From positions 124,001 through 188,000 of IMG/VR virus record IMGVR_UViG_3300028829_003504: 64,000 nt of DNA; one strand, written 5' to 3'. A program made the position numbers and the translations under genes. The notes beneath the pieces are model-generated. The model saw only the letters and a program-made list of their open reading frames with translations. It ran no database searches and had not been told where the DNA came from. This document shows, piece after piece, positions 7,048 to 45,454 of the stretch (its first letter is position 1; every line of letters starts with the position of its first letter).

Positions 7048-7197
7048 ACTGAGTTTCCTTTTAGTTAATAGAAATTGCGTCTTCTTAGAGACACTGCATT
7101 ATATCAAATTGGAACCTTGATGTATACAGAGAAATGAGACGGCGCTAGGCAAGTTAGGTCCTGTACGTATTATGACCACCTACCTAGAGACGTGTTC

Positions 7198-8796
7198 TTA
7201 CTTCTTCATTTTCTGCGTTTTAGTTTTAGCATTGAAATCATACTTAGGTGAAAGTGCCTTGTACTTCTTAACACGTTCTACTAAGTCAGCTTCGATGCGG
7301 GCATTCGGAGATTTACGCTCTTTAGCCAGAGACTTAATTTCCGCTTTAAGTTCTTTAATCGTTTTGACTATAGCAGAACGCTCAAGAGAGGCAAGGCGTC
7401 TAATCTGCAGGTCAAGGATACGTTTAGCGTATTCGACGGGTTTCTTAATTGCTTTACTTAAGGCGGCATCAGGCTCTTTCGCTTTAAGTACTTTAGGTAG
7501 TACTTTAAGTATCAAGTCTCTATTATCCACGGCGAACAATAATAGTTCTTGGTAATCAAGTTTGCGGGTTGCTTCTTTAATCAAGTAATCTATGTAGTCA
7601 ATTTCTAACTTGATGCGGTACTTAATCCAAGTATTAATAAATTGAGGAACATTAGGACGTTCGAACGTTACCTTGTCTATGTGCTTATGCGTACAGCCTA
7701 GATCAAAGTGCTCTTTAGTGGTAAGAATCTTTTCAACTTTCTCAGCCAGTTCGAAGAACTTGTCTTCACTAATTCCGCGCTTAGGTTCAACGATGTATAA
7801 GCAGCCATAAGGACCAGAACGACCATACTTATCTTTCTTACCCGTTCTATCGTAAGCACGCTGTACTGAGTCTAAAGCGTTAATCTTTTCGAGCTGCTTA
7901 ACAACTGAGGCTCCGCGAAAACCAGGGCTGTAGGATTGAATACTAATCTTCTTGGCTGCATCTTTGTTTTTGTGCTCCCACGTAGCAGATATGACAGGTG
8001 TAAAGGCCATGCTACCTCGTCCAGTCTTAATCAGCTCTGCGAAGTCATCGGCAGAAGTGACATCAATTGAGCCGTAAGGGTAGTGTACTTCAAGATTCTT
8101 AATGCAGGCTTTTTCAGTAATAGCCTTACCTCGTAGACCTCCGCGTAACAACTTAACAATACCTTCAATCGCGAATGGAGGATTACCAGCACGTACACCA
8201 TAAGCAGGTGCAGTAGGATTACCCATCATCAACATGACTGGCAGTAGGGCAGGTAAGTGGACAGGCATCATTGCTGTGTTGTCGAAGTTCTGCTGCATAG
8301 GTACAACATTCAAGTAGCCGCTATCTAGTAGGAATAACTTGCTGAATACAGATAGACGAGCTTCGGTATATCGATAAGCAGCAGCACCATCGACTGGGCT
8401 ACCCCAATTACCTTCGCCACGCACTAGCTTAGGGCTAGCGTTAGCTAAAGTAACCATTGCATCGTAACAAGCACCGTCACCATGCGGGTGATAAGAACCA
8501 ATTGTGTCACCTACAACTTTAGCGGACTTACGTGTCTTAGCCGTATAAGTTAAATTCAATTGCTGCATTGCCCATAATAAAGCTCTATGGACAGGTTTCA
8601 ATCCGTCACGATGTTCTGGTATAGCGCGTTCTTCAACAACATATGAACCATATATCTTTAGGGCCATCGATGCAAAGTTATTAATCGAGATATCTTTAAA
8701 CGTATCTGGATTCATAATATGGACGGAGCCTTTAGCCATACTAGTTTTACTAGTCTTGGCTATCCGAGTGGCATTCTTTTTTGTTCTATTAGTCAT
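7198..8796 (-). CDS. gyrA: Type IIA topoisomerase A subunit (GyrA/ParC-like), no C-terminal pinwheel
   Basis: RAIPEHRDGLKPVHR, YHPHGD, GNWGS, catalytic AAYRYTEARL. Start placed at MTNRTKK. Confidence 0.93.
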   Translation of the reverse strand: MTNRTKKNATRIAKTSKTSMAKGSVHIMNPDTFKDISINNFASMALKIYGSYVVEERAIPEHRDGLKPVHRALLWAMQQLNLTYTAKTRKSAKVVGDTIGSYHPHGDGACYDAMVTLANASPKLVRGEGNWGSPVDGAAAYRYTEARLSVFSKLFLLDSGYLNVVPMQQNFDNTAMMPVHLPALLPVMLMMGNPTAPAYGVRAGNPPFAIEGIVKLLRGGLRGKAITEKACIKNLEVHYPYGSIDVTSADDFAELIKTGRGSMAFTPVISATWEHKNKDAAKKISIQSYSPGFRGASVVKQLEKINALDSVQRAYDRTGKKDKYGRSGPYGCLYIVEPKRGISEDKFFELAEKVEKILTTKEHFDLGCTHKHIDKVTFERPNVPQFINTWIKYRIKLEIDYIDYLIKEATRKLDYQELLLFAVDNRDLILKVLPKVLKAKEPDAALSKAIKKPVEYAKRILDLQIRRLASLERSAIVKTIKELKAEIKSLAKERKSPNARIEADLVERVKKYKALSPKYDFNAKTKTQKMKK

Positions 8797-8807
8797 TATA
8801 ATTCCAA

Positions 8808-9347
8808 TTATTCGTTGCAGTCGGTGCAATCACTATTTACACTTTTAAGTGTATTAGACCTATTATGTGTAGAGGTACTTAGTCTACCGGACGTAATACC
8901 TTGAAAACTAGATCCGTTCAAAGTGACAGGCTTACTTATGAAGAAAGGCTGCAAAGCATTATATAGCAGACTAGGCACTCCTTGATTAAGTTCCATGTAC
9001 GAAGTAAGCGACTCATACTGGTCAAGCACCTTGCTGGTAATAGATCTTTGCAGTAAAGCGTAACGCCATTCGTGCAGGTCCTCAGTATTATAATCCAAGG
9101 CACGGCCTTTAACATAGTTCTCTAAGCCCTCAGGGTCAGTACAATTAGTGAGTCCGTTAATTGAATTCTTAGTAATCTCAAATTTATCATTAAGAATTAT
9201 GCTGGACGCAAAAGACATAGAGGCTATAGGATAGGTTGTAATAATCTTATCACCTATGTCATGTACTATTACGGGCATTTTAAGTACAACGATTTCAGGA
9301 TCGTGTGCTCTGACCCTAGGCCATTGTAGTAATAAATAGTGAAACAT
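8808..9347 (-). CDS. Hypothetical protein between the topoisomerase subunit genes
   Basis: 179 aa ORF filling the gyrB-gyrA gap. Confidence 0.7.
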   Translation of the reverse strand: MFHYLLLQWPRVRAHDPEIVVLKMPVIVHDIGDKIITTYPIASMSFASSIILNDKFEITKNSINGLTNCTDPEGLENYVKGRALDYNTEDLHEWRYALLQRSITSKVLDQYESLTSYMELNQGVPSLLYNALQPFFISKPVTLNGSSFQGITSGRLSTSTHNRSNTLKSVNSDCTDCNE

Positions 9348-9369
9348 GCGGGGTTCCTATTATTCGAGA

Positions 9370-11391
9370 TTAATGTTTAAGGCCAATAAGCTTACGTCTA
9401 GCTTCGGGTGAATCACCAACAACAGCAGTAAACCATTTGTCCATTTCAGGACTACACGCTGGGTTGATTTTAAATAAGCGGCGAGTTTCTGGGTTCATAC
9501 CAAAGTATTCTAACTCGTCTTCCGACATTTCGCCGAGTCCTTTGATGCGCTTAACACCAGTCTTACTGGTCCCTTTAGGAAGTTGGTCAGTAACTTCTTC
9601 GAGAGTCATACCGCCGTAGAATTGTCCGTTATGATTAATACTGAACAAGGGGTTATCAACTACGTAGACTAAACCTTCTTTATATACGTCAGGTACGAAC
9701 TTATGTAAGAAGCCAAGCAATGAAGTACCGATATGGAATCCATCAGGGTCGGCATCAGGCATGATGATAATAGCACCACGAACACGAAGTTTATCAATAC
9801 TGAATTGAGGAACACCCGTGTTACGCTTATCTATCTTCAACTCAAGACCAAGAGCAATCAGCAAATCTTGTATTACTTTATTGTTCACAACTTTATCAAG
9901 AGAAGCACTAACAGCATTCAAGGGCTTACCTCTAAGCTTCAACACTTCTTGGTACTCAGGGTCACGCGCGTTCTTAGCAGTACCACCAGCAGAGTCACCT
10001 TCTACAATGTAGAGTTCACGATGTTCTGGTTTTGCATCAGGTGCAATGGTTAATACTTCTGGAATGATTGCACCTTTCGATTTTTTCTTAGTATCGGAAA
10101 GAGATTTCATTACTGACTTCAACCCTTCAACTTGCTTCTGGAATTCAGTAGCACGTTTGATTAGGTTCTTAGCGATGTTGGGATTCTTCTTGAAGTACTC
10201 AGTCAGGGGATCGACTAACATATCCTCAACGTCTTTATCAACTTTCGATTCCAACTTATCTTTTATCTGACCGCTGAATTGCGCGCCGTGCATTTTCCAT
10301 TCGAAGAAACCTACAAGACCCATCATCAAGTCTTCACGCTTAAAGCCAAGGCCTTTCTTCTTACCTTTAGTTTTAGCTGCTGACTCATGAGGTTTGATTG
10401 CTCTGGCGAGTGCTGCTTTAAAGCCATTGACATGAGTACCGTGCTCAATACTCGGAGAACTGTTTACGAAAGATTTAAACAGTTCTGCATCAGTATGATC
10501 AGACCATTGAACGGCAACAGTCATGTAGTCTGTCTGTAGCGTGAATGGTTTACGGCCAACAGAATTCAATTCGTTCTCGTCCATAAATATTTTAGGTATA
10601 GCATCAAGACCTTTCTTGTTGACCATTGTCTTAGACTTTAACTTACCTTTAACTACTTGCGATACTGTCAACGTTAATCCTGGATTAAGCAATGTCATAT
10701 TGCGTAACCAAGGGCCTACGGATTTAGCATTCTGCTTAGCAGGAATTGGTTTGAATGTTTTCTTTTTGCGCTCTGAACGACTAGCGTTTTCGGCAATGAT
10801 TGTAAAGTCAGGAGTAAAACGAACGATTGTACCGTAGCCGCTTTTCTTCTGCAATAGATCCATAACATCTTTTCCGGGCTTCTTGTTCTTTGGATTAGGA
10901 AAGTCCGTCTCACCTTTTGTGAATGATTGATAAGACCACTTACCTCCAAATGACGACCATACTTCAAGCTTAGCAGAGCAGGCGTTAACAGCAGCACTAC
11001 CGACACCATGCGTACCAGCAGATGTTTTATAGGCATCTTGATTGTTCTTACCGCCAGCATGTATGCGAGTGAATACGGCGGTAAGAGAGTTTATCTTATC
11101 ACCGCCTTTGAGTTTCTTCATACCGACTGGAATACCGCCCGCGAAATCGGCAACGATATAACTGTGTTTTGTTGGGTCAAGAACAATCTCACCTGCTTTA
11201 CATCGACCCGCTATGTATTCATCGTAGAAGTTATCCACTTGCTCTTTGATCATTCTGAAAAGCATCGGATTACCTAAGGCACCCATGTACATACTAGGGT
11301 TCATTCTTATGCCATCAAGGCCTTCAAGGATTTCAATACTTTCCGAGCTATAATCCTTACCTTTCGTGGCTTTCTTTTTCTTAGCTACCAT
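9370..11391 (-). CDS. gyrB: Type IIA topoisomerase B subunit (GyrB/ParE-like)
   Basis: LEGLDGIRMNPSMYMG, HAGGK, GTHGVGSAAVNA, TOPRIM VEGDSAGG, LRGKPLN, DADPDG, RIKGLGEM. Confidence 0.95.
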   Translation of the reverse strand: MVAKKKKATKGKDYSSESIEILEGLDGIRMNPSMYMGALGNPMLFRMIKEQVDNFYDEYIAGRCKAGEIVLDPTKHSYIVADFAGGIPVGMKKLKGGDKINSLTAVFTRIHAGGKNNQDAYKTSAGTHGVGSAAVNACSAKLEVWSSFGGKWSYQSFTKGETDFPNPKNKKPGKDVMDLLQKKSGYGTIVRFTPDFTIIAENASRSERKKKTFKPIPAKQNAKSVGPWLRNMTLLNPGLTLTVSQVVKGKLKSKTMVNKKGLDAIPKIFMDENELNSVGRKPFTLQTDYMTVAVQWSDHTDAELFKSFVNSSPSIEHGTHVNGFKAALARAIKPHESAAKTKGKKKGLGFKREDLMMGLVGFFEWKMHGAQFSGQIKDKLESKVDKDVEDMLVDPLTEYFKKNPNIAKNLIKRATEFQKQVEGLKSVMKSLSDTKKKSKGAIIPEVLTIAPDAKPEHRELYIVEGDSAGGTAKNARDPEYQEVLKLRGKPLNAVSASLDKVVNNKVIQDLLIALGLELKIDKRNTGVPQFSIDKLRVRGAIIIMPDADPDGFHIGTSLLGFLHKFVPDVYKEGLVYVVDNPLFSINHNGQFYGGMTLEEVTDQLPKGTSKTGVKRIKGLGEMSEDELEYFGMNPETRRLFKINPACSPEMDKWFTAVVGDSPEARRKLIGLKH

Positions 11392-11395
11392 TATA

Positions 11396-11836
11396 TCATC
11401 CTAATAGGTTTTCTGGAATACCGTAATCATCAGCCGTATTGTTACTTGGCTCCATGACTCTTAATTGGTTTACGTACTGTCTAAAAGCCGAGATGGCTTC
11501 TTCGTTTTTGTCAAAGGGAAACTCTAAGCCACCAGGCTCTTTATCGTCATCTAATTCACCACTCAACCAACGTCTAATTATAACGCTGTGCTGGATGTGA
11601 GTATAGGACGCTTCAAGAAGTTCCATACTACAAATCGATCTATCTAACTGGTCAATGTTGACTGGGTGGAACATACAATTAGTGAAGTCCAGTTTAATAG
11701 TGTTTGTGTTAACGTCAAAGAATACTATTGAGTAGTATTCACCTATAGGTATAACGCGAAATACTGAGTCTTTTGTTTGTTCTATTTTATCCTTGATTGC
11801 TTCTACCAGATGATTAAATTTATTTAGATCGTTCAA
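11396..11836 (-). CDS. Hypothetical protein
   Basis: 146 aa, operon-packed. Confidence 0.7.
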   Translation of the reverse strand: MNDLNKFNHLVEAIKDKIEQTKDSVFRVIPIGEYYSIVFFDVNTNTIKLDFTNCMFHPVNIDQLDRSICSMELLEASYTHIQHSVIIRRWLSGELDDDKEPGGLEFPFDKNEEAISAFRQYVNQLRVMEPSNNTADDYGIPENLLG

Positions 11837-12374
11837 TTATATGTACCTCTGTCTCGGCCGTCATCATCAATAAGCGCTCAATGCTATCTTGTGTGAGGTT
11901 GTTATTACGGGGTAGTACAGTAGTGCCATAAAAGGGAAGTTCCTTTAACGGTTGTGTTTTGATAGCATTAGCATGATTGTACATGATCATTTCATATATC
12001 TGAGTAATGCCTTCATTCTTAAATAAGGGGAGCACCTCGCATTGCGCCAAAACTGTCTCCATAATTAGCTTAGCTTTACTTAAATCCTCCAAGTGCTTAA
12101 CTAGAACTCCGTACTTAGCTTTAGCTTTCGTACTCTCAGCTTCGGCTTGATACAGGTCTTGGTGCTTAATATTATTATTTGCAACGGAGGAGTCGGCCAC
12201 AATATTCTTATGATAAGCAATTGCTGCTTGACCCATGGATATATCTCCAGCGACATCGCCCATAGAGGATTCTATATTTAATAATTCACGTACGGTGAAG
12301 TGATACACACTAGAGTCTAAGATGAAACTCTTAGCGGCTAGTAGATAGGATACGTGAGGTAGTTGATCAGGCAT
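11820..12374 (-). CDS. Hypothetical protein
   Basis: 184 aa, AAGGA RBS. Confidence 0.7.
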   Translation of the reverse strand: MPDQLPHVSYLLAAKSFILDSSVYHFTVRELLNIESSMGDVAGDISMGQAAIAYHKNIVADSSVANNNIKHQDLYQAEAESTKAKAKYGVLVKHLEDLSKAKLIMETVLAQCEVLPLFKNEGITQIYEMIMYNHANAIKTQPLKELPFYGTTVLPRNNNLTQDSIERLLMMTAETEVHIIERSK

Positions 12375-19811: not shown

Positions 19812-20624
19812 TCAATTAGATAAGGGAAACACGTCGCTGACCTCCATAACAGCGGTCTTACCAGATTTAACATTCAATAGGCGAACTCTCTCCTTACTAG
19901 CACTTGCCGCAATAATTCTATAGACGCGGTCATCAATTTGAATTGGTTTCCAGAACAACTTAGGTGAAAGACCTTTAGTTGAAAGTTTCTTAGCTTGCAC
20001 TTTGAACTTCTTCTCTAGTTCAGCTTTTTTAGAATTGCTATATGGATTAACACCAGTCACTTTAGTTTTGACTAGTTTTGCACCAGATTCTGTTGATTGC
20101 TTCGTTCCATCCGAAGCCTGTTTCTTTTTTAAAGGTTTGCGCTCTTTGATTTTAGGAGAAGATGTATCACCAGACAAAGCAGCTAACACGGCTTTCTTTG
20201 TGCCGTTGACAATTCTACCATTCTCCTTACGGAGACGGAACTTGCCATTTTCAAAACCAACGATCATCACTTCTACCTCTCTAACAGAGATTACTTTGCC
20301 GAACATATTGTTCTTAATACCGTCTTCGTCGGTAATGCTTTCTTTGTACTGCACACGTAACGCTTTCTTCTCACCACGTACAAACTCTAGACCAGAAACT
20401 TCACTGGAAGGGGCTATCGCTTTTACTGTTGGTGTTTTCTTTTGTTCAGGTTGACCGTTGGGTTTGAATTTTATTGTGATAGTTCCGTTATCTTGGTCGA
20501 TAACCATACCACGAGTATTAAGTTTAAGGACATCTACTAATGATGCGCTGCCTTGGTTTGAACCAACAGAAACGATTTCATTTATAGCTTTACGGATTGC
20601 GCTTAATTTTAATTGAACAGTCAT
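19812..20624 (-). CDS. Hypothetical basic protein
   Basis: Start MTVQLK (AGGAG RBS); three promoter motifs upstream. Confidence 0.75.
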   Translation of the reverse strand: MTVQLKLSAIRKAINEIVSVGSNQGSASLVDVLKLNTRGMVIDQDNGTITIKFKPNGQPEQKKTPTVKAIAPSSEVSGLEFVRGEKKALRVQYKESITDEDGIKNNMFGKVISVREVEVMIVGFENGKFRLRKENGRIVNGTKKAVLAALSGDTSSPKIKERKPLKKKQASDGTKQSTESGAKLVKTKVTGVNPYSNSKKAELEKKFKVQAKKLSTKGLSPKLFWKPIQIDDRVYRIIAASASKERVRLLNVKSGKTAVMEVSDVFPLSN

Positions 20625-20941
20625 GACGACTTCTCCTATGTTTATACAACATTCGCTCAACGTGAGCTTTCGGTTTATATGAGGGGGTTTGAAGTTGAAA
20701 AGTGTTGCTTCAACTTGATTACATTATAGCAAAATATAAGGTGGTTGACTAAGGTATTATTGGCCACTATTAGGCAATGTATCTATGCGATACTCGAATA
20801 CTAATATTATCAATTGCAACTCACTATCTTTACAGTTTTATAAATACCAGTTAGTGCTTATATTGAGGCTGAAACGTTTTGCTTCAACTGGACGCATTAT
20901 AACAAATATCAGCCCCTGTGTCTTGTTTGTTTCAGACGGCA

Positions 20942-21106
20942 CTAGGCAAGCAAGCAGAATAGACATATCGCTACCATGCACGATATAAGCAAAGCTAGTA
21001 ACATACGGTCAGCACGTTTTGATTTACGTATGACTTCTTCTATAGCTTCTGTCCTACGGAGTTCGTGGACTTCATCACGCCACTTGTGTATAGATTGATT
21101 ACTCAT
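20942..21106 (-). CDS. Small membrane-anchored protein
   Basis: MSNQSIH... ending in hydrophobic LLALLISCMVAICLFCLLA. Confidence 0.6.
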   Translation of the reverse strand: MSNQSIHKWRDEVHELRRTEAIEEVIRKSKRADRMLLALLISCMVAICLFCLLA

Positions 21107-23432: not shown

Positions 23433-25268
23433 TTAATCCATATTAATCAATTTACGAACTTCAAACAAAGAGAACTCAATGCCTTTAAGGCACATAAAGT
23501 TTTCAGTATCGGAGTTCGAAGTGACCAACATTAGAATCTGCTCTACGGTAAAATCTATATCCTTTATAGTTTTGAAAACCCCGCCCTTAGTAACTTTACG
23601 TTTATGTAAGGCGAATCTAATTTTCTTCACCCAAGCATCAAAGACCTCGTAGAGAAGGATTTCCAGTTTCTTATAAGTAGGATCAGTAATTAATGTGACG
23701 CCCAGTTCCTTTACCATAACCTTCATATTGTGATATTTTAACGCTGAGGGTGTTTCTTCACACACAGTCAAAGTATATAAAGCTACAATATATGAATCTG
23801 GGGCAAAAGCTAAAATTTCTTCTTCAAAGCCATTTATGTTACATTTGATAAGTGCGCTTATGATTTCCATGCGGTCCATAGGCTCAAGGTCACTTTCGAA
23901 TTCAAAATCGGAGCTACTGGCTGGGTTAATTTTACGTTTACCTGTAAGCATATGACCGATTTCATCTTCGTCGTGTCCGCCTTCGTCCCAGGCGTCCTCT
24001 TCATCCTCTTCATCCCACGCTGCGTCTTCCTCTTCTTCGTCCCAGTCGTCTTCTTCGTCGTTTGCGTAGTACTCACGTACATCAGAATAGGACATGGCGT
24101 CAAGCATATCACGAGTAATACCATTGTCTTCAGCTAAAATCATTTGGCGGAGCTGGCCGTTAGTCTTAACCTTATGAGGTTTCTTTTCAAGATCTACTAT
24201 GAGGTATTCCTCATACAACGTGTTAATCTTTTCATCAGACGCCTTACAGTAAAAGTCTTTACCTATATAAGCAACAGAATAAAGATATAGGGCTTTGCGC
24301 GAAGCTTCTTCCGAGCGAGCGGATGTATGACTAATACCAGTTAATTGGTATTCCCTTTCCTTAAGTCTAGTAATCGTTTCAGTAAGGGTAGATACTCTAT
24401 TGTTGTAAAGTTCACGGCAGTTGGCTTGACCCGCCATACCTTCTTTAGGTTTATCGCGTGAACTACAGAAGACTGCGTGGGTCATAGGCTTAAGGAATTT
24501 CGAAGCACACCAACAGCACTTACACGTAGCTCCTTTAGGAAAGTCTTTAACTGCTGAATTAGATGCCTTCAGATCACTAAGTTCTGTCTCTGCCGATAGT
24601 CTACGGGCAATTATGTGATCTAGTTGAGTAGGGTTCTTCTTTCCTAGTTCTGATAATTCGATAGTTTCCATGCCAGTGGCCTCGTCTAATGTTGGTACGT
24701 TTGCGGTTTTATCATCTGCCTTTATATCTTCGTGAATGGCTTCATAATCTAAACCAAGAAACTTTGCCTCATCTTTAGATAGAGATTTAACAGTCTTCTT
24801 AGAAAGGCGGTTGTGTTTACGTATAGCAGTATCCTCAACTTCCTGACGTCGATTCTTCTCAGCAAGAGCGGCCTGCTCAACATACATCGAGCAAGTTATT
24901 TTGCCGTTGGTAGGGTCACGGTATAAATCGATTTGAGAGAAGCGTCCGGAGCCTTGCTTGAAAGCCGTTATGCTATAGTCTTCCGTATCTTCTATATTGA
25001 TACGTTTCATGTTAAGGCGCCCGAATAAAAAGCTTGTTAGAGATACACCCACTCCCTCTTTACCAGATCGTCGGCAAGTGTAACCTCTACTGTCTTTGAT
25101 AATAAACAGGTGGCCGTGAGGAGCTCGTTTACATAAGGTATGCTCATTAAACAAATGCTGTTTGTCGCCATCTATAATGATTGATTCAGTTTCACCTGAA
25201 GGGTCGTAACTGTTAGAAGTTAAACGTACTTCAACTATGGTTTGTTCTTGTTCTTTCATAATATACAT
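23433..25268 (-). CDS. Multidomain hypothetical protein (Zn finger, acidic tract, helical repeat modules)
   Basis: CKCCWC...FCS...CR motif; DDWDEEEE tract; 611 aa. Confidence 0.8.
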   Translation of the reverse strand: MYIMKEQEQTIVEVRLTSNSYDPSGETESIIIDGDKQHLFNEHTLCKRAPHGHLFIIKDSRGYTCRRSGKEGVGVSLTSFLFGRLNMKRINIEDTEDYSITAFKQGSGRFSQIDLYRDPTNGKITCSMYVEQAALAEKNRRQEVEDTAIRKHNRLSKKTVKSLSKDEAKFLGLDYEAIHEDIKADDKTANVPTLDEATGMETIELSELGKKNPTQLDHIIARRLSAETELSDLKASNSAVKDFPKGATCKCCWCASKFLKPMTHAVFCSSRDKPKEGMAGQANCRELYNNRVSTLTETITRLKEREYQLTGISHTSARSEEASRKALYLYSVAYIGKDFYCKASDEKINTLYEEYLIVDLEKKPHKVKTNGQLRQMILAEDNGITRDMLDAMSYSDVREYYANDEEDDWDEEEEDAAWDEEDEEDAWDEGGHDEDEIGHMLTGKRKINPASSSDFEFESDLEPMDRMEIISALIKCNINGFEEEILAFAPDSYIVALYTLTVCEETPSALKYHNMKVMVKELGVTLITDPTYKKLEILLYEVFDAWVKKIRFALHKRKVTKGGVFKTIKDIDFTVEQILMLVTSNSDTENFMCLKGIEFSLFEVRKLINMD

Positions 25269-25284: not shown

Positions 25285-25320
25285 TAATAGTAAAAGTTTC
25301 TTTTGAAACTTTTACTATTA
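25285..25320. promoter_or_regulatory. 16-bp perfect inverted repeat over a -10 box and start site
   Basis: TAATAGTAAAAGTTTC-TTTT-GAAACTTTTACTATTA. Confidence 0.7.
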
Positions 25321-25398
25321 TAGTATATAAGAGGCCACTAAGTATATGCTATTTTGGGAAGGTCTTAGGCGCTGAAACGACAAGAGAGCCGAAGCTCC

Positions 25399-25854
25399 CT
25401 AATGTAGTGTTCTATCTAACTGATCTAGCTGGGCGACAATCATGCCGGATAGTGATGGAAGTACTTTGAACGTGGCATTTTGCAATAATATTTTTACGTC
25501 ATATTCATCAAAGTATTCAATCAAGAAGCAGAAGGGATTATTGTTTCCATTGACTGAGGCGTCATTAATAATATATCTGAACATTTCGTCTCGACCCCAA
25601 TCGCCAGTTCTGTCCAGTTCCATGTAACCGTTGCATAGTAGAATTAGGATTTCTCCGCGCAGGCCTTCTAATACATGCTCTCTACTTTCTTCTGGATTAC
25701 GTTCAATGTTGTTGCTGGCTAACAAGTCGGCATCACATGAAATAAGGTAGTTTTCCAGAGAAGCGTATGTCACTTCCTTTCGGGTAGATAAGTATGTACT
25801 TATTGCGTCACCTAATAAGTCACCTAGTACGCAGAATTTAAGAGTCTTACTCAC
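25399..25854 (-). CDS. Hypothetical protein
   Basis: 151 aa, GTGA overlap with the upstream gene. Confidence 0.7.
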   Translation of the reverse strand: MSKTLKFCVLGDLLGDAISTYLSTRKEVTYASLENYLISCDADLLASNNIERNPEESREHVLEGLRGEILILLCNGYMELDRTGDWGRDEMFRYIINDASVNGNNNPFCFLIEYFDEYDVKILLQNATFKVLPSLSGMIVAQLDQLDRTLH

Positions 25855-34070: not shown

Positions 34071-34154
34071 TGTTTTCTCCTGGGTGAATAAAAAATGATG
34101 GGTGAATATAAGATGTTCCATTTCACCCATCGAACATCGCAGCAGTCTCAAGTG

Positions 34155-34892
34155 CTACGAAAGTTTAACTGACTCAATTACTTCTTTACCGATAGTGCCA
34201 CTGTTTGCATCAGCCGCTATATCTTTGTGTAGGCGTAGATCCTTTTCGCCGAATGCGAAGATAACTTGAAACTCTTTACGCATGTCCTTTTGTTTCCATT
34301 CGATGTCCAACTCGGAAGGAAAGACAATCTCGGTCTTAGATAAAGAAGGGTAAACCCTAAGCTGTTCGTTTTCGCTTCTAATGTTAGTCGGTTGATTGAA
34401 GTCTACCTTTCTAACAGCGATCAAGTAGACGTTTTGCTGTGCGGCTAACGGTGCGAGTTTCTTGTGGATGAACTCGCACGTAACAGCTCCAGCCATGTTG
34501 TATCTTCCGCAGATACCTACATCAAAGATTGACTTGTCATCATCTTTGATGAAAGTGTTTACGAAAGTCGCACGGCTTGCACCGTAGCCATAAACTTCCA
34601 TTTGTGTAACGTCACCTTTTCTATACACGCTCATAGTGTCTGTGCCTTTGGACCAGAACGGGCGATACTCGCGGTTCGATTCTAGGTCGGCCGAGTAGAT
34701 TCCGTAATGCGCGTAACCATTAGCAGACCCTACAAGCAATACTAAAGCGTTCGTCAGAGGAATAATGTGGCGCGCCACGTTGCGGCCACTATACTCGTCT
34801 TCATCTTTAACGTGAATTGTTATATCTGGGTAGTTACCGCAGTTCGCCCACCAATTGATTGACAACCTAGTAGGTTCGATTAATTTGCTCAT
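34155..34892 (-). CDS. Hypothetical protein
   Basis: Start MSKLIEP, ATGA coupling to the upstream gene. Confidence 0.75.
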   Translation of the reverse strand: MSKLIEPTRLSINWWANCGNYPDITIHVKDEDEYSGRNVARHIIPLTNALVLLVGSANGYAHYGIYSADLESNREYRPFWSKGTDTMSVYRKGDVTQMEVYGYGASRATFVNTFIKDDDKSIFDVGICGRYNMAGAVTCEFIHKKLAPLAAQQNVYLIAVRKVDFNQPTNIRSENEQLRVYPSLSKTEIVFPSELDIEWKQKDMRKEFQVIFAFGEKDLRLHKDIAADANSGTIGKEVIESVKLS

Positions 34893-35212
34893 TCTTTTTC
34901 TCTCCAAATAGTTAAGTTTGTGGAATCATCAGGTTGACTTTTAAAATTGTGATCTTGGATAGTCGTAGATAACATCTGCAACCCTAGAATACTTTTACCA
35001 GCATAAGGTATTATACCTGTCACGCGTCTGCCTAGTGGAAGACCCAGTACCTCATCCCAACTAGAATAACCTGCAGACTTCGCAAAGGTGTCTGCGGGGT
35101 GCTCGATTTTTACCTCATTAAATGCGTGTTGTTCAGATAGCTTCAATGCGTGGCGAAGTGCAGGAGTCTTATCTAAATCCAACGAGTAATCCAGATTCTG
35201 TGTAAACTTCAT
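34889..35212 (-). CDS. Hypothetical protein
   Basis: 107 aa; FAKSAGYSSWDEV motif. Confidence 0.65.
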   Translation of the reverse strand: MKFTQNLDYSLDLDKTPALRHALKLSEQHAFNEVKIEHPADTFAKSAGYSSWDEVLGLPLGRRVTGIIPYAGKSILGLQMLSTTIQDHNFKSQPDDSTNLTIWREKE

Positions 35213-35223
35213 TATTTAATTCC

Positions 35224-35577
35224 TTATTTGAATAAGCTTTCGGCCAAGTCAGGTTCGTCTGAGTTTTTAACTGCCCAGATAATTTGAGCTTTCAACGCTT
35301 CAAAGAATTCGTTTTTCTTAGTGTGCCATTCACGGCGATCACTATCGTAGTCTTTAGGTGAAAAGAACTCTCTTACAATTAAAGCTTCAAGCATCGAAAC
35401 TTGTGCGGTCTCCAGGGCTTGAGTAGTTTCCCATATATGTATATAAGCCTTGCTGTTGACATAATCATGTAAGCCTATTGACATACCGCCTACGTCAACA
35501 ATTAAACGTTGCATTTCCATAATGGCCGGAACAAGGTGAGGTTGTTGGTTAAGAAAGTTCTTAGGCAATTCTTTCAT
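35224..35577 (-). CDS. Hypothetical protein
   Basis: 117 aa, GGAG RBS. Confidence 0.7.
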   Translation of the reverse strand: MKELPKNFLNQQPHLVPAIMEMQRLIVDVGGMSIGLHDYVNSKAYIHIWETTQALETAQVSMLEALIVREFFSPKDYDSDRREWHTKKNEFFEALKAQIIWAVKNSDEPDLAESLFK

Positions 35578-35666
35578 TAGTTAATCTCCGTTGCTTTACC
35601 ACGTTGCGTCCGCAGATTGGTAAATTGATTGGGCTCTTTTAGCAGTAGTCATTTGGGTAATACCTT

Positions 35667-35876
35667 TTATAGTTGTTTTACTTTAACTAGGGAGTAACAG
35701 TCTTTAAATTTAGCTAGGCGTTCGGAAGACCACGCTTCTTGGTAGTCATCACGGAGTTCTCCATTCAAACAGACGTACTCACTACCATCGGTGAATCTAA
35801 ACATCTTCTTTGGGTATAGACCGCAATCAACGGCGACTTTATATACGCCGTAGTCCTCAAGTATAAGTTGCGACAT
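35667..35876 (-). CDS. Small hypothetical protein
   Basis: 69 aa, AAGGA RBS, first gene after a promoter. Confidence 0.7.
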   Translation of the reverse strand: MSQLILEDYGVYKVAVDCGLYPKKMFRFTDGSEYVCLNGELRDDYQEAWSSERLAKFKDCYSLVKVKQL

Positions 35877-36140
35877 ATTAACATTCCTTTAGTTTAAATC
35901 AATATAGTTGTCTTGCTCTTTATGTCTTAGTATAACACATCGTAGCTATCAGTAATATAGCATAATAAGACGGCATTAGGCAGTGAAATACAGAGCATAC
36001 AGCTAGCTAGAGAGCGCCTGAGGCTGGTGGTTTTTAGCTTCAATATGAAGTACTAGAAAGGACGAAATGTCTTTAAAAGGGGTAGTATGTAGTCATCCTT
36101 CTCTCGCATACCCCACCCATTGTAAGCTGATCAATACCTT

Positions 36141-37739
36141 CTAGTATAGGTCAGCTAGGTCTATAGTATTTAGGCGTTCGGCATCATGTATAGTTTTATA
36201 CCAAGTCGTAGCAATAAAATTTTCTCCGAGTAACAGGTTCTTGTATTGAGACTTAGAAATAATTTCCTGTACGTTTTCTCTAAAGTCGGTAATCAATCTA
36301 TATCGAGGTCCATCTTTATATAAGAAACCCCAAATAGTCAATCTATTCAAGATAGACGATATGTGATGAGGTTTACGTCCAATCCGTTTTCCTAAGTCTT
36401 CATAAGTAATAAGGTTAGAGTTTAAGTCGTCGATGTGAGGTAAGACCAAAGTAGCTAAACCAAAGTAGTTGTTATTTATAGGAGTAAGGCCTATTAGGTA
36501 TCCTAGGTATTTTAAATTCTGTGTGTTCATAGTATTTTCTTTATCTAAGTTGATTAATTTACATAATGCTTCTTTCATACTTCTTAAGCTCTGGGCGACA
36601 CCAAGACTATCGTTTTTCAAATTCGCTTCAATACCTTTATTAATTAAACTAAGTAAGACTTCAGGTGCTACGGCTTCTTCAACTTCTGTGCGTTGATCTT
36701 GAAGTTTTTGTCTGTCCAACTCAAGTGCCTTTAGTTCCAGGCGGGCTTCTACAGGACTGCGGCCTCCAAGGTCGTACCTTATACCGTCTGAGTAAGACAA
36801 GGTCGTCTTATATTGAGGACATAAGTTATACATTGTTATAAAATCTTTTAGTACTATACGAGGTCTTAGCACATAAAGGTAGTCTAAGGCAGAGTCTACA
36901 TTATCAGATTGTCTATTACCGAGACCGTAGAAAACCCTAGCAGCTATGTATAATTCTACGCAAGGTAATACTAGTGGGAACTTGGCACTTTGCTCTATGG
37001 CAATTAGACCCTGGACTATTTCAATATCTCGGTTTGCCTGTCTATTAAACTCAGCAGATATAGTACTTATTTTTCCGTCACACTTACTTTTAAATATTTC
37101 GTACAGAGTGACTGGGTCACATTCAGTTAGATTAACTAAGTCGATGTGGTCAGGTATAAGATTCTTCTCTTTTAAATAGTCAGTGATTTCACTTAGGCTA
37201 GGGTCACAATTATAAGCACATTCTTCTAGGGAACTTCCATAATCATAGGCAGCCATCAGCCAGTTGTACATGGCGTCATGGCCTTGAGACTCGATTTCTT
37301 TTTTCTGTTCGTCACTTTGGATTAAATTTAAGTTGTTCCCTTGTCGATCCTTAAGGTAAGACAACAACACGGATGTCACTATTTCACTTTCTTGGAAAGG
37401 TCCTACGACATAAGTATGGGTGTGATATTCCTCATACTTAGGAATTTCGCCGTCTATGCCTTGTGCGTTAAAATCAGGACAATGGTTATGGGTATATACA
37501 GTATGTGCAACTGCCGGTGCTGGAAAATCTTTTGAGGAGCTATACTTCTCAAGGGCCTGTAGGAACAGACTGTGTTTGACTTTAGACGTACAGCCACTGT
37601 CGTCGTCAATTGCCAGGTCGTTGAATGTTATTTCTAAAAATGGACCTGCAGGCTTTACTGATATGATATTATGTGCTTCTGACCATTGTGAAGAAAGCAC
37701 CTTTGAGTGAGATAGTATTTCTTTAATTGAGTTTAACAT
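36141..37739 (-). CDS. Hypothetical protein with probable C-terminal winged HTH
   Basis: ITYEDLGKRIGRKPHHISSILNRLTIWGFLYKDGPRYRL. Confidence 0.75.
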   Translation of the reverse strand: MLNSIKEILSHSKVLSSQWSEAHNIISVKPAGPFLEITFNDLAIDDDSGCTSKVKHSLFLQALEKYSSSKDFPAPAVAHTVYTHNHCPDFNAQGIDGEIPKYEEYHTHTYVVGPFQESEIVTSVLLSYLKDRQGNNLNLIQSDEQKKEIESQGHDAMYNWLMAAYDYGSSLEECAYNCDPSLSEITDYLKEKNLIPDHIDLVNLTECDPVTLYEIFKSKCDGKISTISAEFNRQANRDIEIVQGLIAIEQSAKFPLVLPCVELYIAARVFYGLGNRQSDNVDSALDYLYVLRPRIVLKDFITMYNLCPQYKTTLSYSDGIRYDLGGRSPVEARLELKALELDRQKLQDQRTEVEEAVAPEVLLSLINKGIEANLKNDSLGVAQSLRSMKEALCKLINLDKENTMNTQNLKYLGYLIGLTPINNNYFGLATLVLPHIDDLNSNLITYEDLGKRIGRKPHHISSILNRLTIWGFLYKDGPRYRLITDFRENVQEIISKSQYKNLLLGENFIATTWYKTIHDAERLNTIDLADLY

Positions 37740-37813
37740 AGTCGTTCTCTCTACTTAGTTTAAGTTTATGGGTGGTACGCCAACCTGAAGCCAGCATTCA
37801 AAGTATGTTTAGT

Positions 37814-38800
37814 TTATTTGGTTTTCTTTTTGGCTACTACTTTCTTTTTGGCTACTACTTTCTTTTTGGCTTTAGTAGTGGATTTTACTTTCTTAGATTC
37901 GGTAGGGCGTTCTGTTTTATCTCCGTCGCCCGGTACCGTTGTTGCTTTAGCTTTCTTGAAGTTCTCAAGCTTGCTTAGGCTAACGGCTATGATTAGACCT
38001 GATCCAGGAAGTTTAACTTGCATATTTTTACCCATCATACCCTGGCTGATAGCCGAATCTTTTGAGTCAATACCTGCGCTCTCTAGGAGTCCTAAAACTT
38101 CAAGGGCTGCTGTGTCAAAATCTAAGGCACGTTGCTCTGCTACAATCTCTTTAGCAGATTTCAAACGAGCTTTAATTTTATCAAGTGATTTGGTGTGTAC
38201 GCTAATAGCTTTAACTGCGGCTACCATGTGCTTTTCCATTTGTTCAGATAAGGTACCTTTAGGTAAAGCGTATAATATAACGTTAGACTTAGCAGTGGCT
38301 TTCTTCTGCTCTTTAACAGGCGCACATCGGCGCGTCAGGTAAGCATAAGAATCACCAGCTTTGTTTTTCTTAGCGTCGAATTCTTCGTACTTACCTTTAC
38401 CTATAGTGAACACGGCTGTAGGTGAAGTTGGGAATTTACTACCCAACAAAGCTGAGATAGATAATGAAGTATGTTCACCAAATAACATTTCTTTAGGTAA
38501 GACAAGTTTGAAGCTACCGTCTTTCATCTTAGTGGTCATTGAAGATTTTATCTCACGTGGCGCTTCAATTAAACCTGACTCAAGTAACGAATCGACTATC
38601 TGCTTACGGTTACGAGAATGAATTTTAGTAATAGTTACTGATTCTCTAGTGACACGACAAGGTGCCAACTTATTAGATAAGGCTGCAACAATCTTAGTTT
38701 GCAGTAATTCGACTTTACCACGGTTTAATAAGCCGTCTCTGTTCAAGTAAGGGTTAGTAAAGTTAGAAGTAAGGGTAATTAATGTGTTTGAGTTTTTCAT
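37814..38800 (-). CDS. Hypothetical basic protein with Lys-rich tail
   Basis: 328 aa; AKKKVV repeats. Confidence 0.75.
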   Translation of the reverse strand: MKNSNTLITLTSNFTNPYLNRDGLLNRGKVELLQTKIVAALSNKLAPCRVTRESVTITKIHSRNRKQIVDSLLESGLIEAPREIKSSMTTKMKDGSFKLVLPKEMLFGEHTSLSISALLGSKFPTSPTAVFTIGKGKYEEFDAKKNKAGDSYAYLTRRCAPVKEQKKATAKSNVILYALPKGTLSEQMEKHMVAAVKAISVHTKSLDKIKARLKSAKEIVAEQRALDFDTAALEVLGLLESAGIDSKDSAISQGMMGKNMQVKLPGSGLIIAVSLSKLENFKKAKATTVPGDGDKTERPTESKKVKSTTKAKKKVVAKKKVVAKKKTK

Positions 38801-38866
38801 AATAACATTCCTTTAAGTATTTAAGTTGTTTCGTTCGCTTTGGACTTATACATAATATAGTAAATT

Positions 38867-38889
38867 AAGAGGGTAGGTCGTACCCTCTT
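38867..38889 (-). terminator. Hairpin, possible terminator
   Basis: AAGAGGGTA-GGTCG-TACCCTCTT; weak U tract. Confidence 0.45.
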
Positions 38890-38911
38890 CGGGGACAATT
38901 GTAATATTGAA

Positions 38912-39295
38912 CTAATTACCCTTGAACGTTTGTTTGCAATTCAGGCACTCGTAGTATTCAAAATACGAATCGCATGAAGTCATCTTAGCGGGGCCTGAAC
39001 ATGACGAACAAGAGCCTGCCCAGTCATCACCTTCGTCATCGCTAATAATAGGTTCACCCGTCTGTTTGCGCCATATTTGAAACACGTAATCGAACACGGC
39101 ATCAATTTTTCTGAATTCGCGGAACTTAGTTGACTCAGAACCGTAGCTCGTCATCTCCAAACCGCATACACATAACGGATCGACACACGCTCCAGGCGTA
39201 TGGCTGCGAGGGTCATTAGGAACTAATTCCTCAAAAGGACCCAGCTTACTTGAGTCTTTACCGCATGAACATTTCCAATCAAAAATATCAGTCAT
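38912..39295 (-). CDS. Small Zn-ribbon protein
   Basis: CSCG, CVCG, CSSC, CLNC. Confidence 0.75.
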   Translation of the reverse strand: MTDIFDWKCSCGKDSSKLGPFEELVPNDPRSHTPGACVDPLCVCGLEMTSYGSESTKFREFRKIDAVFDYVFQIWRKQTGEPIISDDEGDDWAGSCSSCSGPAKMTSCDSYFEYYECLNCKQTFKGN

Positions 39296-39340
39296 AGTTT
39301 TTCCTTATTCATATAAGTTTGCTTGCTTCGTTATGGACTC

Positions 39341-39393
39341 ATTATAGCAGGTTAATACCTTTGATTATACTCTTAAATGAGCCGACATTAGGC
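39341..39393 (-). promoter_or_regulatory. TATAAT promoter with upstream GCCTA(A/G)TGCCG-like box (representative copy)
   Basis: Six copies with -10 at 7098, 20723, 20896, 25317, 35929, 39341 and plus-strand TAGGC 47-49 nt further on. Confidence 0.7.
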
Positions 39394-45453: not shown

Positions 45454-45454
45454 A

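What the first reader, a model, noticed from the sequence alone, without database searches (positions are those of the whole stretch)
7098..39393. Promoter class with -10 TATAAT, no consensus -35, and a fixed-distance box near -55
Seen, as plus-strand starts of the -10 complement and of TAGGC: 7098/7146, 20723/20771, 20896/20943, 25317/25366, 35929/35977 (TATACT variant), 39341/39389. Spacing is 47-49 nt each time. Minus-strand consensus is about GCCTA(A/G)TGCCG. The -35 positions are poor (TATACA, TAGTCA, AAGACA) and several leaders contain AAGCAA. Inference: host sigma70 promoters switched on by a phage or virion-delivered activator.
Basis: partly seen in the sequence, partly recalled or inferred. 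Interest (0 to 1): 0.62.

Follow-up and report, generated by a model that had tools for sequence, protein, structure and literature searches.

The report
Early promoters of a jumbo phage
The six sites are real and look like the early promoters of a 262-kb marine jumbo phage; host-type, with a "TG" extended -10, a weak -35 and a conserved upstream box, they recur at matching positions in every close relative examined and in six more distant cultured phages, but nothing shows that an activator is needed.

Summary
All six sites exist as stated. On the minus strand each reads (T/C)GCCTA(A/G)nnnCGkCT, about 30 nt, TGn, TATAAT, in intergenic DNA 45-100 nt before a start codon.

GCCTA-N38-40-TGnTAYAMT occurs 5 times, against 0.2 in shuffles. 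The genome holds no other sigma70-like intergenic promoters.

The window lies in a 261,788-bp phage that has its own sigma factor; no RNA polymerase was looked for. Two commoner motifs precede replication genes (AAACTGTAAA) and tail genes (TAATTTA). The TATAAT class precedes mostly ORFans, so it is most likely the early class, read by host sigma70 polymerase.

The same architecture, in the same register, is seen in six cultured relatives (one site found in JA29), and orthologous promoters keep box and -10 in closer marine contigs. The box lies at -60 to -46, the UP-element position. Short A/T patches sit near -43 and -55, but conserved G/C positions are not explained by alpha-CTD. It has no dyad symmetry.

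An activator is possible but unshown. No RNA data exist. This is a new variant of a known kind.

The parts
7091..7151 (-). Site 1 promoter. Box TGCCTAGCGCCGTCT at 7137-7151; -35-like TATACA at 7121-7126; TGA at 7104-7106; -10 TATAAT at 7098-7103; predicted start near 7091.
   Evidence: Orthologous promoters at L078:9413 and L079:4040 keep the box and the -10 while the spacer diverges.
20716..20776 (-). Site 2 promoter. Box TGCCTAATAGTGGCC at 20762-20776; -35-like TAGTCA at 20746-20751; TGC; -10 TATAAT at 20723-20728.
   Evidence: It is the best genome-wide hit of a matrix built only from relatives. Its ortholog is L082:8980.
20889..20948 (-). Site 3 promoter, in tandem 173 nt upstream of site 2. 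Box TGCCTAGTGCCGTCT at 20934-20948; -35-like AAGACA at 20919-20924; TGT; -10 TATAAT at 20896-20901. No ORF lies before site 2.
   Evidence: Its ortholog is L082:8741, and the tandem arrangement is kept there. Y3 also has a tandem pair at 239811/240000.
25310..25371 (-). Site 4 promoter, the weakest member. Box CGCCTAAGACCTTCC at 25357-25371; no TG (TAC); -10 TATAAT at 25317-25322.
   Evidence: its upstream-element score ranks 16th among 842 control hexamers. No recognisable ortholog was seen in the ENA contig.
35922..35982 (-). Site 5 promoter. Box TGCCTAATGCCGTCT at 35968-35982, which is the consensus; TGT; -10 TATACT at 35929-35934.
39334..39394 (-). Site 6 promoter. Box CGCCTAATGTCGGCT at 39380-39394; TGC; -10 TATAAT at 39341-39346.
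   Evidence: Its ortholog L082:3915 keeps CGCCTAAcaTCGGCTCA and TATAATGAGTCCA, and has GTGACA as -35 at 17 bp.
6541..7047 (-). First gene after site 1: a 168-aa acidic ORFan (pI 4.5).
   Evidence: No PHROG or Pfam match. The slot is variable in relatives: 69 aa in one, 126+67 aa in another, Acb1 plus a pesticin-like protein in L081.
19812..20626 (-). First gene after sites 3 and 2: about 270 aa, basic (pI 10), an ORFan. The ATG at 20624-20626 is preceded by AGGAGA. The longest ORF starts with TTG at 20660.
23433..25268 (-). First gene after site 4: 611 aa, 13 Cys, with only a weak PHROG match.
35667..35876 (-). First ORF after site 5: 69 aa. It is followed by a run of ORFans extending to about 32700.
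38912..39295 (-). First gene after site 6: 127 aa, acidic, 10 Cys, so possibly zinc-binding.
25383..25400 (-). Terminator-like hairpin (GGGAGC-TTCG-GCTCTC followed by a T-rich tail) ending just upstream of the site 4 box.
39478..39503 (-). Terminator-like hairpin followed by TTTTTT, about 85 nt upstream of the site 6 box.
20827..20839 (-). AAAACTGTAAAG, a member of the other promoter class (replication or middle type), lying between sites 3 and 2.
   Evidence: It is conserved in the ENA relative.
20692..20716 (-). 5'-proximal leader stem-loop of site 2 (AAGTTGAAGC...CTTTTCAACTT), which contains AAGCAA.
   Evidence: z = -4.6. The hairpin is retained, with base changes, in the ENA relative.
20868..20888 (-). 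5'-proximal leader stem-loop of site 3 (GTTGAAGC-AAAAC-GTTTCAGC).
   Evidence: z = -3.5.
25289..25316 (-). 5'-proximal leader stem-loop of site 4 (AGTAAAAGTTTC-AAAA-GAAACTTTTACT).
   Evidence: z = -3.3.
7077..7094 (-). 5'-proximal leader stem-loop of site 1 (GTGTCT...AGACGC).
   Evidence: (z = -3.2).

Best explanation
The six sites are the early-class promoters of a jumbo myovirus that carries its own sigma factor. Relatives of this group are reported to lack an RNA polymerase and to rely on the host enzyme (PMC7824862); no polymerase gene was searched for here. Early genes would therefore be read by the host's sigma70 holoenzyme.

Each promoter is a composite. It has a TGn extended -10 plus TATAAT, read by sigma regions 3.0 and 2.4. 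It has a degenerate -35 (T-35, A/T-34; 4 of 6 matches in sites 1-3) at 17-bp spacing. It has a clade-specific upstream element at about -60 to -46 (-41 in the cultured relatives).

That element occupies the place of an UP element. Short A/T patches centred near -43 and -55 (and -64), on roughly one face of the helix, are proposed to dock the two alpha-CTDs. The G/C positions conserved across the clade (G/C at -59/-58, G at -49) frame these patches or add a further contact; in the marine lineage the frame reads GCC and CGkCT.

Transcripts begin about 7 nt after the hexamer, at the conserved CCA, and mostly open with a stable 5' stem-loop that often contains rAGCA(A). This stem-loop would protect or mark the early mRNAs. 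Phage-specified promoters then take over: AAACTGTAAA for replication genes and TAATTTA for virion genes.

Shown: the motif, its statistics, its position relative to genes and terminators, its conservation and register across relatives, and the division of gene functions among the three motif classes. Inferred: that it is read by host sigma70, that it is early, that alpha-CTD contacts the box, and the role of the 5' hairpins.
For: (1) The motif is real and non-random.

(2) All sites are intergenic, co-oriented with the genes and 45-100 nt before start codons. Two lie directly after terminator-like hairpins.

(3) They are the only sigma70-like intergenic promoters in 262 kb. No canonical -35/-10 class exists, and generic sigma70 matches are not enriched over shuffles.

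(4) Gene functions divide into three classes. TAATTTA precedes three tail sheath genes and a tail protein gene. AAACTGTAAA precedes the genes for SSB, clamp loader, NAD ligase, RNase H, NAMPT, NMNAT and tRNA-Lys. The TATAAT class precedes proteins with no family or an unnamed one.

(5) The same architecture occurs in the same register in Phage NCTB (5 sites), Yersinia fHe-Yen9-02 (6), Erwinia Y3 (10), Dickeya AD1 (10), Erwinia Yoloswag (7) and Dickeya JA29 (1 site found). All are co-directional and lie in the 10-65 kb downstream of the sigma-SSB-UvsX genes.

(6) A matrix built from relatives only returns our sites 2, 5, 1 and 6 as the four best hits in the genome. An upstream-only matrix ranks our six sites 0, 0, 3, 3, 16 and 28 among 842 control hexamers.

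(7) In closer marine relatives (57-78% amino-acid identity), orthologous promoters keep the box and the -17 to +7 region. Identity there is 0.56-0.96, against 0.25-0.45 in the flanks; parts of the spacer fall between these values.

(8) Positions conserved across the clade are A/T at -56/-55 and -44 to -42, G at -49, T at -35, T at -17, TG, and the hexamer. Alpha-CTD subsites lie near -43 and -53 (PMC3326320).

(9) Phage Lu11 keeps the sigma ortholog and 36 ACTGTAAAT sites, which its record annotates as middle/late promoters. It shows no enrichment of TGnTAYAMT (7 against 15 in the control). The TATAAT class therefore does not track the phage sigma.

(10) Leader structure: mean z = -1.68 over 45 sites, p = 3e-9.
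Against: No transcription start or expression data exist. Only DNA runs hold this phage.

The box in this phage is G/C-rich, and GCCTA is invariant in 6 of 6 sites. Alpha-CTD makes no base-specific contacts (PMC3326320), so the UP-element reading does not explain the most conserved letters.

The phage sigma gene is not downstream of any of the six sites, so how the switch to phage promoters is primed is unexplained.

Site 4 lacks TG, has a weak box, and has no recognisable ortholog in the closest relative.

The host is unknown, so 'host sigma70' is an extrapolation from the universal -10/TG consensus.

The assignment 'early' rests on gene content and on analogy, not on timing data.
Confidence: 0.6

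Rival explanations
1. The promoters are intrinsically weak sigma70 promoters that need an activator. The activator would be phage-encoded, or delivered with the virion, would bind the box at about -53 and would recruit the polymerase in a class I-like way.
For: The box has invariant G/C letters that alpha-CTD cannot read (PMC3326320). It sits at a fixed register 30 nt from TGn in all relatives. Its sequence drifts between phage lineages: TGCAAATA..GGnCAAAAT in the enterobacterial phages, TTTTTTATCnnGGTACAAAA in NCTB, TGCCTAAT-GCCGTCT here. That drift is what co-evolution with a phage protein would give. The box never occurs without the -10. From memory, there are precedents: P2 Ogr sites at -55, Mu Mor/C, and virion-delivered T4 Alt acting on alpha.
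Against: TGn plus TATAAT plus a partial -35 is sufficient without an activator (PMC4390567). The box has no dyad symmetry. The core GG/CG..C(T) is nearly the same in phages of different hosts and genera, so lineage specificity is modest. No candidate protein was identified: there is no AsiA match and no Pfam DNA-binding domain in the ten proteins scanned, eight of them genes following the sites. An immediate-early class cannot depend on a protein made after infection, so only a virion-borne or host factor would fit.
Confidence: 0.25
2. The class is read by the phage's own RpoD-like sigma factor (window 43492-44541). It would then be a middle rather than an early class.
For: The phage sigma retains the region 2 aromatic residues used for -10 melting (Y..WW). 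A profile of it matches only RpoD/SigA region 2 in the PDB, at E 0.04-0.27. All phages that have the class also have this sigma.
Against: Lu11 has the sigma ortholog and abundant CTGTAAAT promoters but no TGnTATAAT class. PaBG also lacks the class. The -10 plus TG is exactly the host consensus. Some promoter class must work before any phage protein exists, and no other sigma70-like class is present.
Confidence: 0.1
3. The box is not a promoter element but a separate signal that happens to lie upstream. Candidates are an operator for late shut-off of early transcription, or part of the preceding terminator or 3' end.
For: Two sites lie next to terminator-like hairpins. Shut-off of early promoters is a common phage need.
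Against: The distance to the -10 is fixed within 1 nt in about 50 sites from nine phages and contigs. An independent signal would not keep that register. Most sites have no terminator next to the box. A shut-off operator function is not excluded, but it would come in addition to promoter function.
Confidence: 0.05

Closest known systems
T4 early promoters (sigma70-dependent, with a phage-specific extended consensus that includes upstream A-rich positions; Alt-modified alpha favours them). Recalled from memory, not tested here.
   Same: Both are host sigma70 promoters of a large lytic myovirus. Both form a tight class with conservation reaching to about -55 or -60, drive mostly small genes of unknown function, and are followed by phage-specified middle and late classes. 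Here the late-type motif TAATTTA and the motif TGTAAATA resemble T4's single-element late promoter TATAAATA.
   Different: Here the -35 is degenerate and TGn is near-universal. The upstream element carries invariant G/C letters rather than only A-tracts. There are only 5-10 members per genome, all in one co-directional region.
UP-element promoters such as rrnB P1 (alpha-CTD subsites near -43 and -53; PMC3326320, PMC4390567).
   Same: The element occupies -60 to -41. A/T positions at -44 to -42 and -56/-55 coincide with the two subsites. In the enterobacterial relatives these are true A-tracts (AAATA, AAAAT).
   Different: UP elements are A/T-rich throughout and are poorly conserved in sequence. 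This element has conserved G/C blocks (GCC, CGkCT, G-49), and in the marine phage it is mostly G/C.
Activator-dependent phage promoters without a -35: P2/P4 late promoters (Ogr/Delta, TGT-N12-ACA centred at -55; from memory) and Mu Pm (a Mor dimer at -43.5 with alpha-CTD at -55/-54; PMC4390567).
   Same: A good -10, a poor -35, and a conserved element at a fixed distance around -45 to -55. In Mu, alpha-CTD is involved next to that element.
   Different: Those sites are dyad-symmetric and bind dimers. This box is asymmetric and TGT-N12-ACA is absent. Those classes are middle or late; this one looks early. Here TGn is present.
Extended -10 promoters of Thermus phage P23-45 (middle/late; phage proteins disable -35 recognition so that TGnTATAAT promoters win). 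From memory.
   Same: A phage class defined by TGnTATAAT with little reliance on a -35.
   Different: No upstream box is described there. It belongs to a different temporal class. No homologs of those phage factors were searched for here.
'Putative middle/late promoters' annotated in Pseudomonas phage Lu11 (NC_017972.1).
   Same: The same phage group. Their 16-nt motif CTGTAAAT... is the AAACTGTAAA class found here.
   Different: That is a different class from the one in the finding. No annotation or paper was found that describes the TGnTATAAT-plus-box class.

Membership tests
sigma70 extended -10 promoter | TG at -15/-14, one base upstream of the -10 hexamer | tested here: met
   Five of six sites have it (TGA, TGC, TGT, TGT, TGC); site 4 has TAC. 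TG is near-invariant in the 45 aligned sites from seven phages.
sigma70 extended -10 promoter | -10 hexamer close to TATAAT, with A at position 2 and T at position 6 | tested here: met
   TATAAT in five sites and TATACT in one.
sigma70 extended -10 promoter | Transcription starts 6-8 nt downstream and is made by sigma70 holoenzyme | not testable with these tools
   Only DNA sequencing runs hold this phage. A conserved CCA lies 5-7 nt after the hexamer in sites 2, 3 and 6 and their orthologs.
canonical -35/-10 sigma70 promoter | -35 hexamer near TTGACA at 16-18 bp | tested here: inconclusive
   TATACA, TAGTCA and AAGACA match 4 of 6 at 17 bp; sites 4-6 match 2-3 of 6. T-35 is conserved across the clade at 1.27 bits. 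One ortholog has GTGACA.
UP element | A/T-rich tract from -59 to -38, with A-tracts at the alpha-CTD subsites near -43 and -53 | tested here: inconclusive
   A/T fraction is 0.9-1.0 at -56/-55 and at -44 to -42, both in the marine set (n=11) and in the other relatives (n=39). But -59 to -57 and -51 to -47 are mostly G/C in the marine set.
UP element | Stimulation depends on alpha-CTD | not testable with these tools
   This needs in vitro transcription with alpha truncated at residue 235, or R265 mutants.
P2 Ogr / P4 Delta dependent late promoters | Dyad TGT-N12-ACA centred near -55 | tested here: not met
   Absent at all six sites. No inverted repeat is better than in shuffles.
Mu Mor/C dependent promoters | Dyad-symmetric 16-bp site centred at -43.5 (PMC4390567) | tested here: not met
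   No dyad was found in -66 to -39.
T4 middle promoters (sigma appropriation) | MotA box at -30 and an AsiA anti-sigma factor | tested here: not met
   There is no conserved element at -30. Pfam AsiA (PF09010) finds nothing in the genome at E<=1; this is a weak test for a diverged phage.
Early promoter class of the Lu11/PaBG/Y3-related jumbo phages (proposed here) | Upstream element in a fixed register 30 nt from TGn-TATAAT; co-directional cluster downstream of sigma-SSB-UvsX | tested here: met

The most novel reading that the evidence does not exclude
The conserved asymmetric box (-60 to -46 here; extending to -41 in the cultured relatives) is the binding site of a dedicated factor. That factor would be conserved across this clade of jumbo phages, either carried in the virion or borrowed from the host. 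It would sit between the two alpha-CTD positions and license immediate-early transcription, or later shut it off. This would be a monomeric, non-dyad, class I-type regulator system of a kind not described for phages.
Probability: 0.25. Interest if true: 0.65.

Novelty: new variant of a known kind. Interest (0 to 1): 0.45.

Why it matters
The jumbo phages related to Lu11, PaBG, Y3, AD1 and NCTB have no mapped transcription programme. Only a 'middle/late' motif had been annotated, in Lu11.

This work gives a testable three-class map. The classes are TGnTATAAT plus an upstream box, AAACTGTAAA, and TAATTTA. The first class delimits a small early regulon of 5-10 promoters that drive fast-evolving ORFs. 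In one relative the equivalent slot holds the anti-CBASS gene Acb1, which is where anti-defence and host-takeover genes are expected.

The upstream box is a rare case of a G/C-containing element that keeps its register at the UP position over deep divergence. Working out what reads it (alpha-CTD, a virion protein or a host factor) would show how polymerase-less jumbo phages capture the host enzyme in the first minute of infection.

The promoters would also serve as compact, strong, -35-independent parts for expression in gammaproteobacteria.

Tried and rejected
Close DNA relatives. megablast of 6 kb against GenBank phages found nothing. An IMG/VR pattern scan for box plus -10 gave 4 loci: one is a 100% identical fragment of the same phage and three are unrelated chance hits. 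IMG/VR protein-seeded scans with two early ORFs gave only the same fragment, or nothing. A metagenome scan seeded with the topoisomerase gave the same contig plus relatives at 31-46% identity.

RNA evidence. Only two DNA runs of one marine sample hold the stretch.

Rfam. Only the tRNA was found.

Sigma and anti-sigma searches. Pfam Sigma70_r2, Sigma70_r4 and AsiA searches of the genome found nothing. The phage sigma is too diverged for them; it is recognised by PHROG 17569 and weakly by a PDB profile search. A single-sequence PDB search found nothing.

Rejected readings:
- The TATACA/TATAAT hexamers between box and -10 as an upstream tandem -10 with the box as its -35. The spacing is inconsistent (18-20 nt) and there is no conservation in relatives.
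- The box as a Neisseria-type DNA uptake sequence (GCCGTCTGAA occurs at site 3). That is one site only.
- Fis, IHF, CRP, DnaA and marbox consensus readings of the box. These were compared by eye from memory, no script was run, and none fits the register.
- Identification of an activator by phyletic pattern. Judged too unspecific and not attempted.

The sixth strict-pattern hit (genome 71462) was rejected as chance. It has no TG and its TATAATG contains the start codon.


Full report
**Observation.** The six coordinate pairs are exact. Read on the minus strand, each site is (T/C)GCCTA(A/G)nnnCGkCT, about 30 nt, TGn, TATAAT. Sites 1, 3 and 5 carry near-identical 15-mers (TGCCTAGCGCCGTCT, TGCCTAGTGCCGTCT, TGCCTAATGCCGTCT). 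Sites 6, 2 and 4 are progressively weaker. The 15-mer with up to 2 mismatches occurs nowhere else in intergenic DNA of the whole genome.

The GCCTA-to-TATAAT distance histogram has its only peak at 46-48 nt, with 6 pairs against a mean of 0.88. With the TGn included, 5 matches are observed against 0.2 expected.

Five of six sites have a TGn extended -10.

**Context.** The window is bases 124,001-188,000 of a 261,788-bp IMG/VR virus record with terminal repeats. It has 40.7% G+C and comes from a marine metagenome.

It encodes topoisomerase II subunits, a DnaB-like helicase, a UvsX-like recombinase, an SSB and a 349-aa sigma factor, PHROG 17569. The sigma is 39-47% identical to those of Yersinia phage fHe-Yen9-02, Phage NCTB, Erwinia phages Y3, Yoloswag and Alexandra, Dickeya phages AD1 and JA29, and Pseudomonas phages PaBG and Lu11. 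In published comparisons NCTB, Lu11 and PaBG fall in the group of jumbo phages that lack an RNA polymerase and carry sigma factors (PMC7824862, PMC7412058).

**Three motif classes.** K-mer enrichment in upstream regions shows two much commoner motifs.
- AAACTGTAAA(T) precedes the genes for SSB, clamp loader, NAD-dependent ligase, RNase H, NAMPT, an NMNAT/Nudix enzyme, a ParB-like protein and tRNA-Lys.
- (G/C)TAATTTA precedes three tail sheath genes, a large tail protein gene and other conserved genes.
- The TGnTATAAT class precedes proteins with no PHROG or Pfam family, or only an unnamed one. It sits in a 25-kb stretch dominated by such ORFans.

No canonical -35/-10 promoters occur in intergenic DNA, and generic sigma70 matches are not enriched over shuffles. 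The six sites are thus the only host-type promoters in the genome. The simplest reading is early (host sigma70), then replication or middle, then late.

The AAACTGTAAA motif is conserved in NCTB (16 sites against 0 in the control), fHe-Yen9-02 (12 against 0) and Lu11 (36 against 0), where GenBank annotates it as 'putative middle/late promoter'.

**Comparative evidence.** The decisive result is that relatives have the same architecture in the same register.

| Phage | Sites | Upstream element |
|---|---|---|
| Phage NCTB | 5 | AACTTTTTTATCnnGGTACAAAA |
| Yersinia fHe-Yen9-02 | 6 | TGCAAATAGCCGTCTAAAAT and variants |
| Erwinia Y3 | 10 | cTGCAAATAAnnGGnCAAAATAGCGGT |
| Dickeya AD1 | 10 | cTGCAAATAAnnGGnCAAAATAGCGGT |
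| Erwinia Yoloswag | 7 | cTGCAAATAAnnGGnCAAAATAGCGGT |
| Dickeya JA29 | 1 found | cTGCAAATAAnnGGnCAAAATAGCGGT |

In each case the core ends 30 nt before TGn-TA(T/C)A(A/C)T. All sites lie on the coding strand, in the 10-65 kb downstream of the sigma-SSB-UvsX cluster, as in the window.

A weight matrix built from relatives alone returns our sites 2, 5, 1 and 6 as the four best hits in the genome. A matrix of the upstream part alone (-64 to -33) ranks our six sites 0, 0, 3, 3, 16 and 28 among 842 other TAYAMT hexamers.

Protein searches then found closer marine relatives: a 311-kb ENA contig, a Logan contig and a JGI contig. In these, orthologs of sites 1, 2, 3 and 6 are present at the syntenic places, including the tandem 3-2 pair with the AAACTGTAAA motif between them. 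The box and the -17 to +7 region are conserved, with identity 0.56-0.96. The flanks diverge to 0.25-0.45, with parts of the spacer in between. Site 4 has no recognisable ortholog.

**Anatomy.** With the hexamer placed at -12 to -7, the positions conserved across seven phages are:
- A/T at -65/-64;
- G/C at -59/-58;
- A at -57 to -54, strongest at -55;
- G at -49 and C at -46;
- AAA at -44 to -42;
- T at -35 and A/T at -34;
- T at -17;
- TG at -15/-14;
- the -10 hexamer.

The marine lineage keeps the A/T positions at -56/-55 and at -44 to -42, and G at -49. It has replaced the remaining A-tract letters by G/C (GCC TA..; CGkCT). The box has no dyad symmetry.

Downstream, a conserved CCA lies where a start is expected. 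The first 35 nt of the leader fold more stably than shuffles: mean z = -1.68 over 45 sites, p = 3e-9, and z < -3.2 for our sites 1-4. AGCA(A) lies 7-14 nt after the hexamer in about 21 of 45 sites. The two leader hairpins of site 2 are retained in the ENA relative, with changes that include a T-A to C-G exchange.

Terminator-like hairpins end just upstream of sites 4 and 6.

**Mechanism.** I take these to be early promoters read by host sigma70 holoenzyme. An extended -10 drives transcription without a -35 or an activator (PMC4390567). Here it is reinforced by a partial -35 and by an upstream element in the place where the two alpha-CTDs bind, near -43 and -53, through narrow A/T minor grooves and without base-specific contacts (PMC3326320).

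The conserved A/T patches fit that model. The conserved G/C letters do not, and they are the unexplained part.

The phage's own sigma is an unlikely reader. Lu11 keeps the sigma ortholog and the CTGTAAAT class but shows no enrichment of TGnTAYAMT (7 against 15 in the control), and PaBG shows none either. The phage sigma does retain the Y..WW melting residues.

The box is more sequence-specific than an UP element, it drifts between lineages, and it never occurs without the -10. An immediate-early class could only use a virion-borne or host factor, however. No candidate was found, and the site is not dyad-symmetric like the Ogr, Delta, Mor or C sites.

One loose end remains. The sigma gene is preceded by the other two motifs, not by this class, so how the switch is primed is unknown.

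**Comparison with known systems.** Functionally the closest are T4 early promoters, as a phage-specific extended sigma70 consensus with upstream conservation (from memory), and UP-element promoters. In form the class resembles the activator-dependent promoters of P2/P4 and Mu, but it fails their defining dyad. It shares the extended -10 strategy with Thermus phage P23-45 (from memory).

Searches of the open literature on these phages found no description of this class. PA5oct, another polymerase-less jumbo phage, is reported to use TTGAC/TATAATA promoters (PMC7318152).

**Verdict.** This is a new variant of a known kind, of moderate interest.

**Limits.**
- There is no RNA evidence.
- The host is unknown.
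- Gene calls outside the tools' ORF lists are my own greedy ORF calls.
- For four relatives only the roughly 65 kb downstream of the sigma gene was read.
- The T4, P2 and P23-45 comparisons rest on memory.

Noticed in passing
window 13847, 14413, 20836, 27199, 40430, 40754, 43492, 49423, 52086, 59592 (minus strand), and genome-wide: A second intergenic motif, AAACTGTAAA(T), lies 30-90 nt before replication and nucleotide-metabolism genes and directly before tRNA-Lys. It is conserved in NCTB, fHe-Yen9-02 and Lu11, where it is annotated as a middle/late promoter. It is probably read by a phage sigma.
   Followed up: partly
window 2553, 6496, 23235, 46170, 56594, 60982/60996, and genome-wide: A third motif, (G/C)TAATTTA, lies 25-50 nt before start codons. 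It precedes three tail sheath genes and a tail protein gene. It is a late-type single-element promoter reminiscent of T4 TATAAATA.
   Followed up: partly
window 39520-40323 (minus strand): An 800-nt stretch without ORFs of 60 aa or more lies downstream of tRNA-Lys. It folds far better than shuffles (z = -4.3) and has no Rfam match. It may be a large non-coding RNA.
   Followed up: partly
window 6405-6540 (minus strand); L078:9900-10000; L079:4875-4976: The 439-aa basic protein gene (5085-6404, PHROG 34809) has its own TAATTTA motif followed by a leader of about 90 nt that is almost identical in two relatives. That is unusually strong conservation for non-coding DNA.
   Followed up: partly
L081:8637-9684: In a 44%-identical relative, the slot after the topoisomerase gene (where site 1 drives a 168-aa ORFan here) holds an Acb1 family (anti-CBASS) gene and a pesticin-like lysozyme-domain gene. 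This suggests the slot collects anti-defence or accessory genes.
   Followed up: no
relatives: L043-L058 (Y3, AD1, Yoloswag, JA29), L024-L036: The distal half of the relatives' upstream element, CTGCAAATA, differs by one base from the core of the other promoter class, CTGTAAATA. Whether the phage sigma holoenzyme also touches the early promoters is open. The marine phage (TGCCTAAT) has lost this resemblance.
   Followed up: no
window 20600-20720 (minus strand) against L082:9000-9100: The site 2 leader has two hairpins kept in the ENA relative with base changes (GCTCA/TGAGC against GCCC./.GGGC, and a GAAA tetraloop version of the first hairpin). It also has a fully conserved 40 nt around the ribosome-binding site.
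   Followed up: partly
window 38912-39295 and 23433-25268 (minus strand): The first genes after sites 6 and 4 are Cys-rich (10 Cys in 127 aa; 13 Cys in 611 aa). They may be zinc-binding early proteins. No family match was found.
   Followed up: no
window 43492-46200 (minus strand): The phage sigma gene is preceded by a TAATTTA motif (46170) and an AACTGTAAAT motif (45360), not by the host-type class. How the first sigma molecules are made is unexplained.
   Followed up: no
L082:6329-8047: The ENA relative carries a thiamine-pyrophosphate enzyme gene (TPP_enzyme N/M/C domains) inside its early ORFan region. It is absent from the window.
   Followed up: no
relatives: Y3 237931 and AD1 236480 (in L045, L049): One orthologous promoter pair is followed at once by a perfect hairpin plus a T-run (AGCGTAGCA..TGCTGCGCTTTTTT). 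This would be a very short transcript or an attenuator.
   Followed up: no
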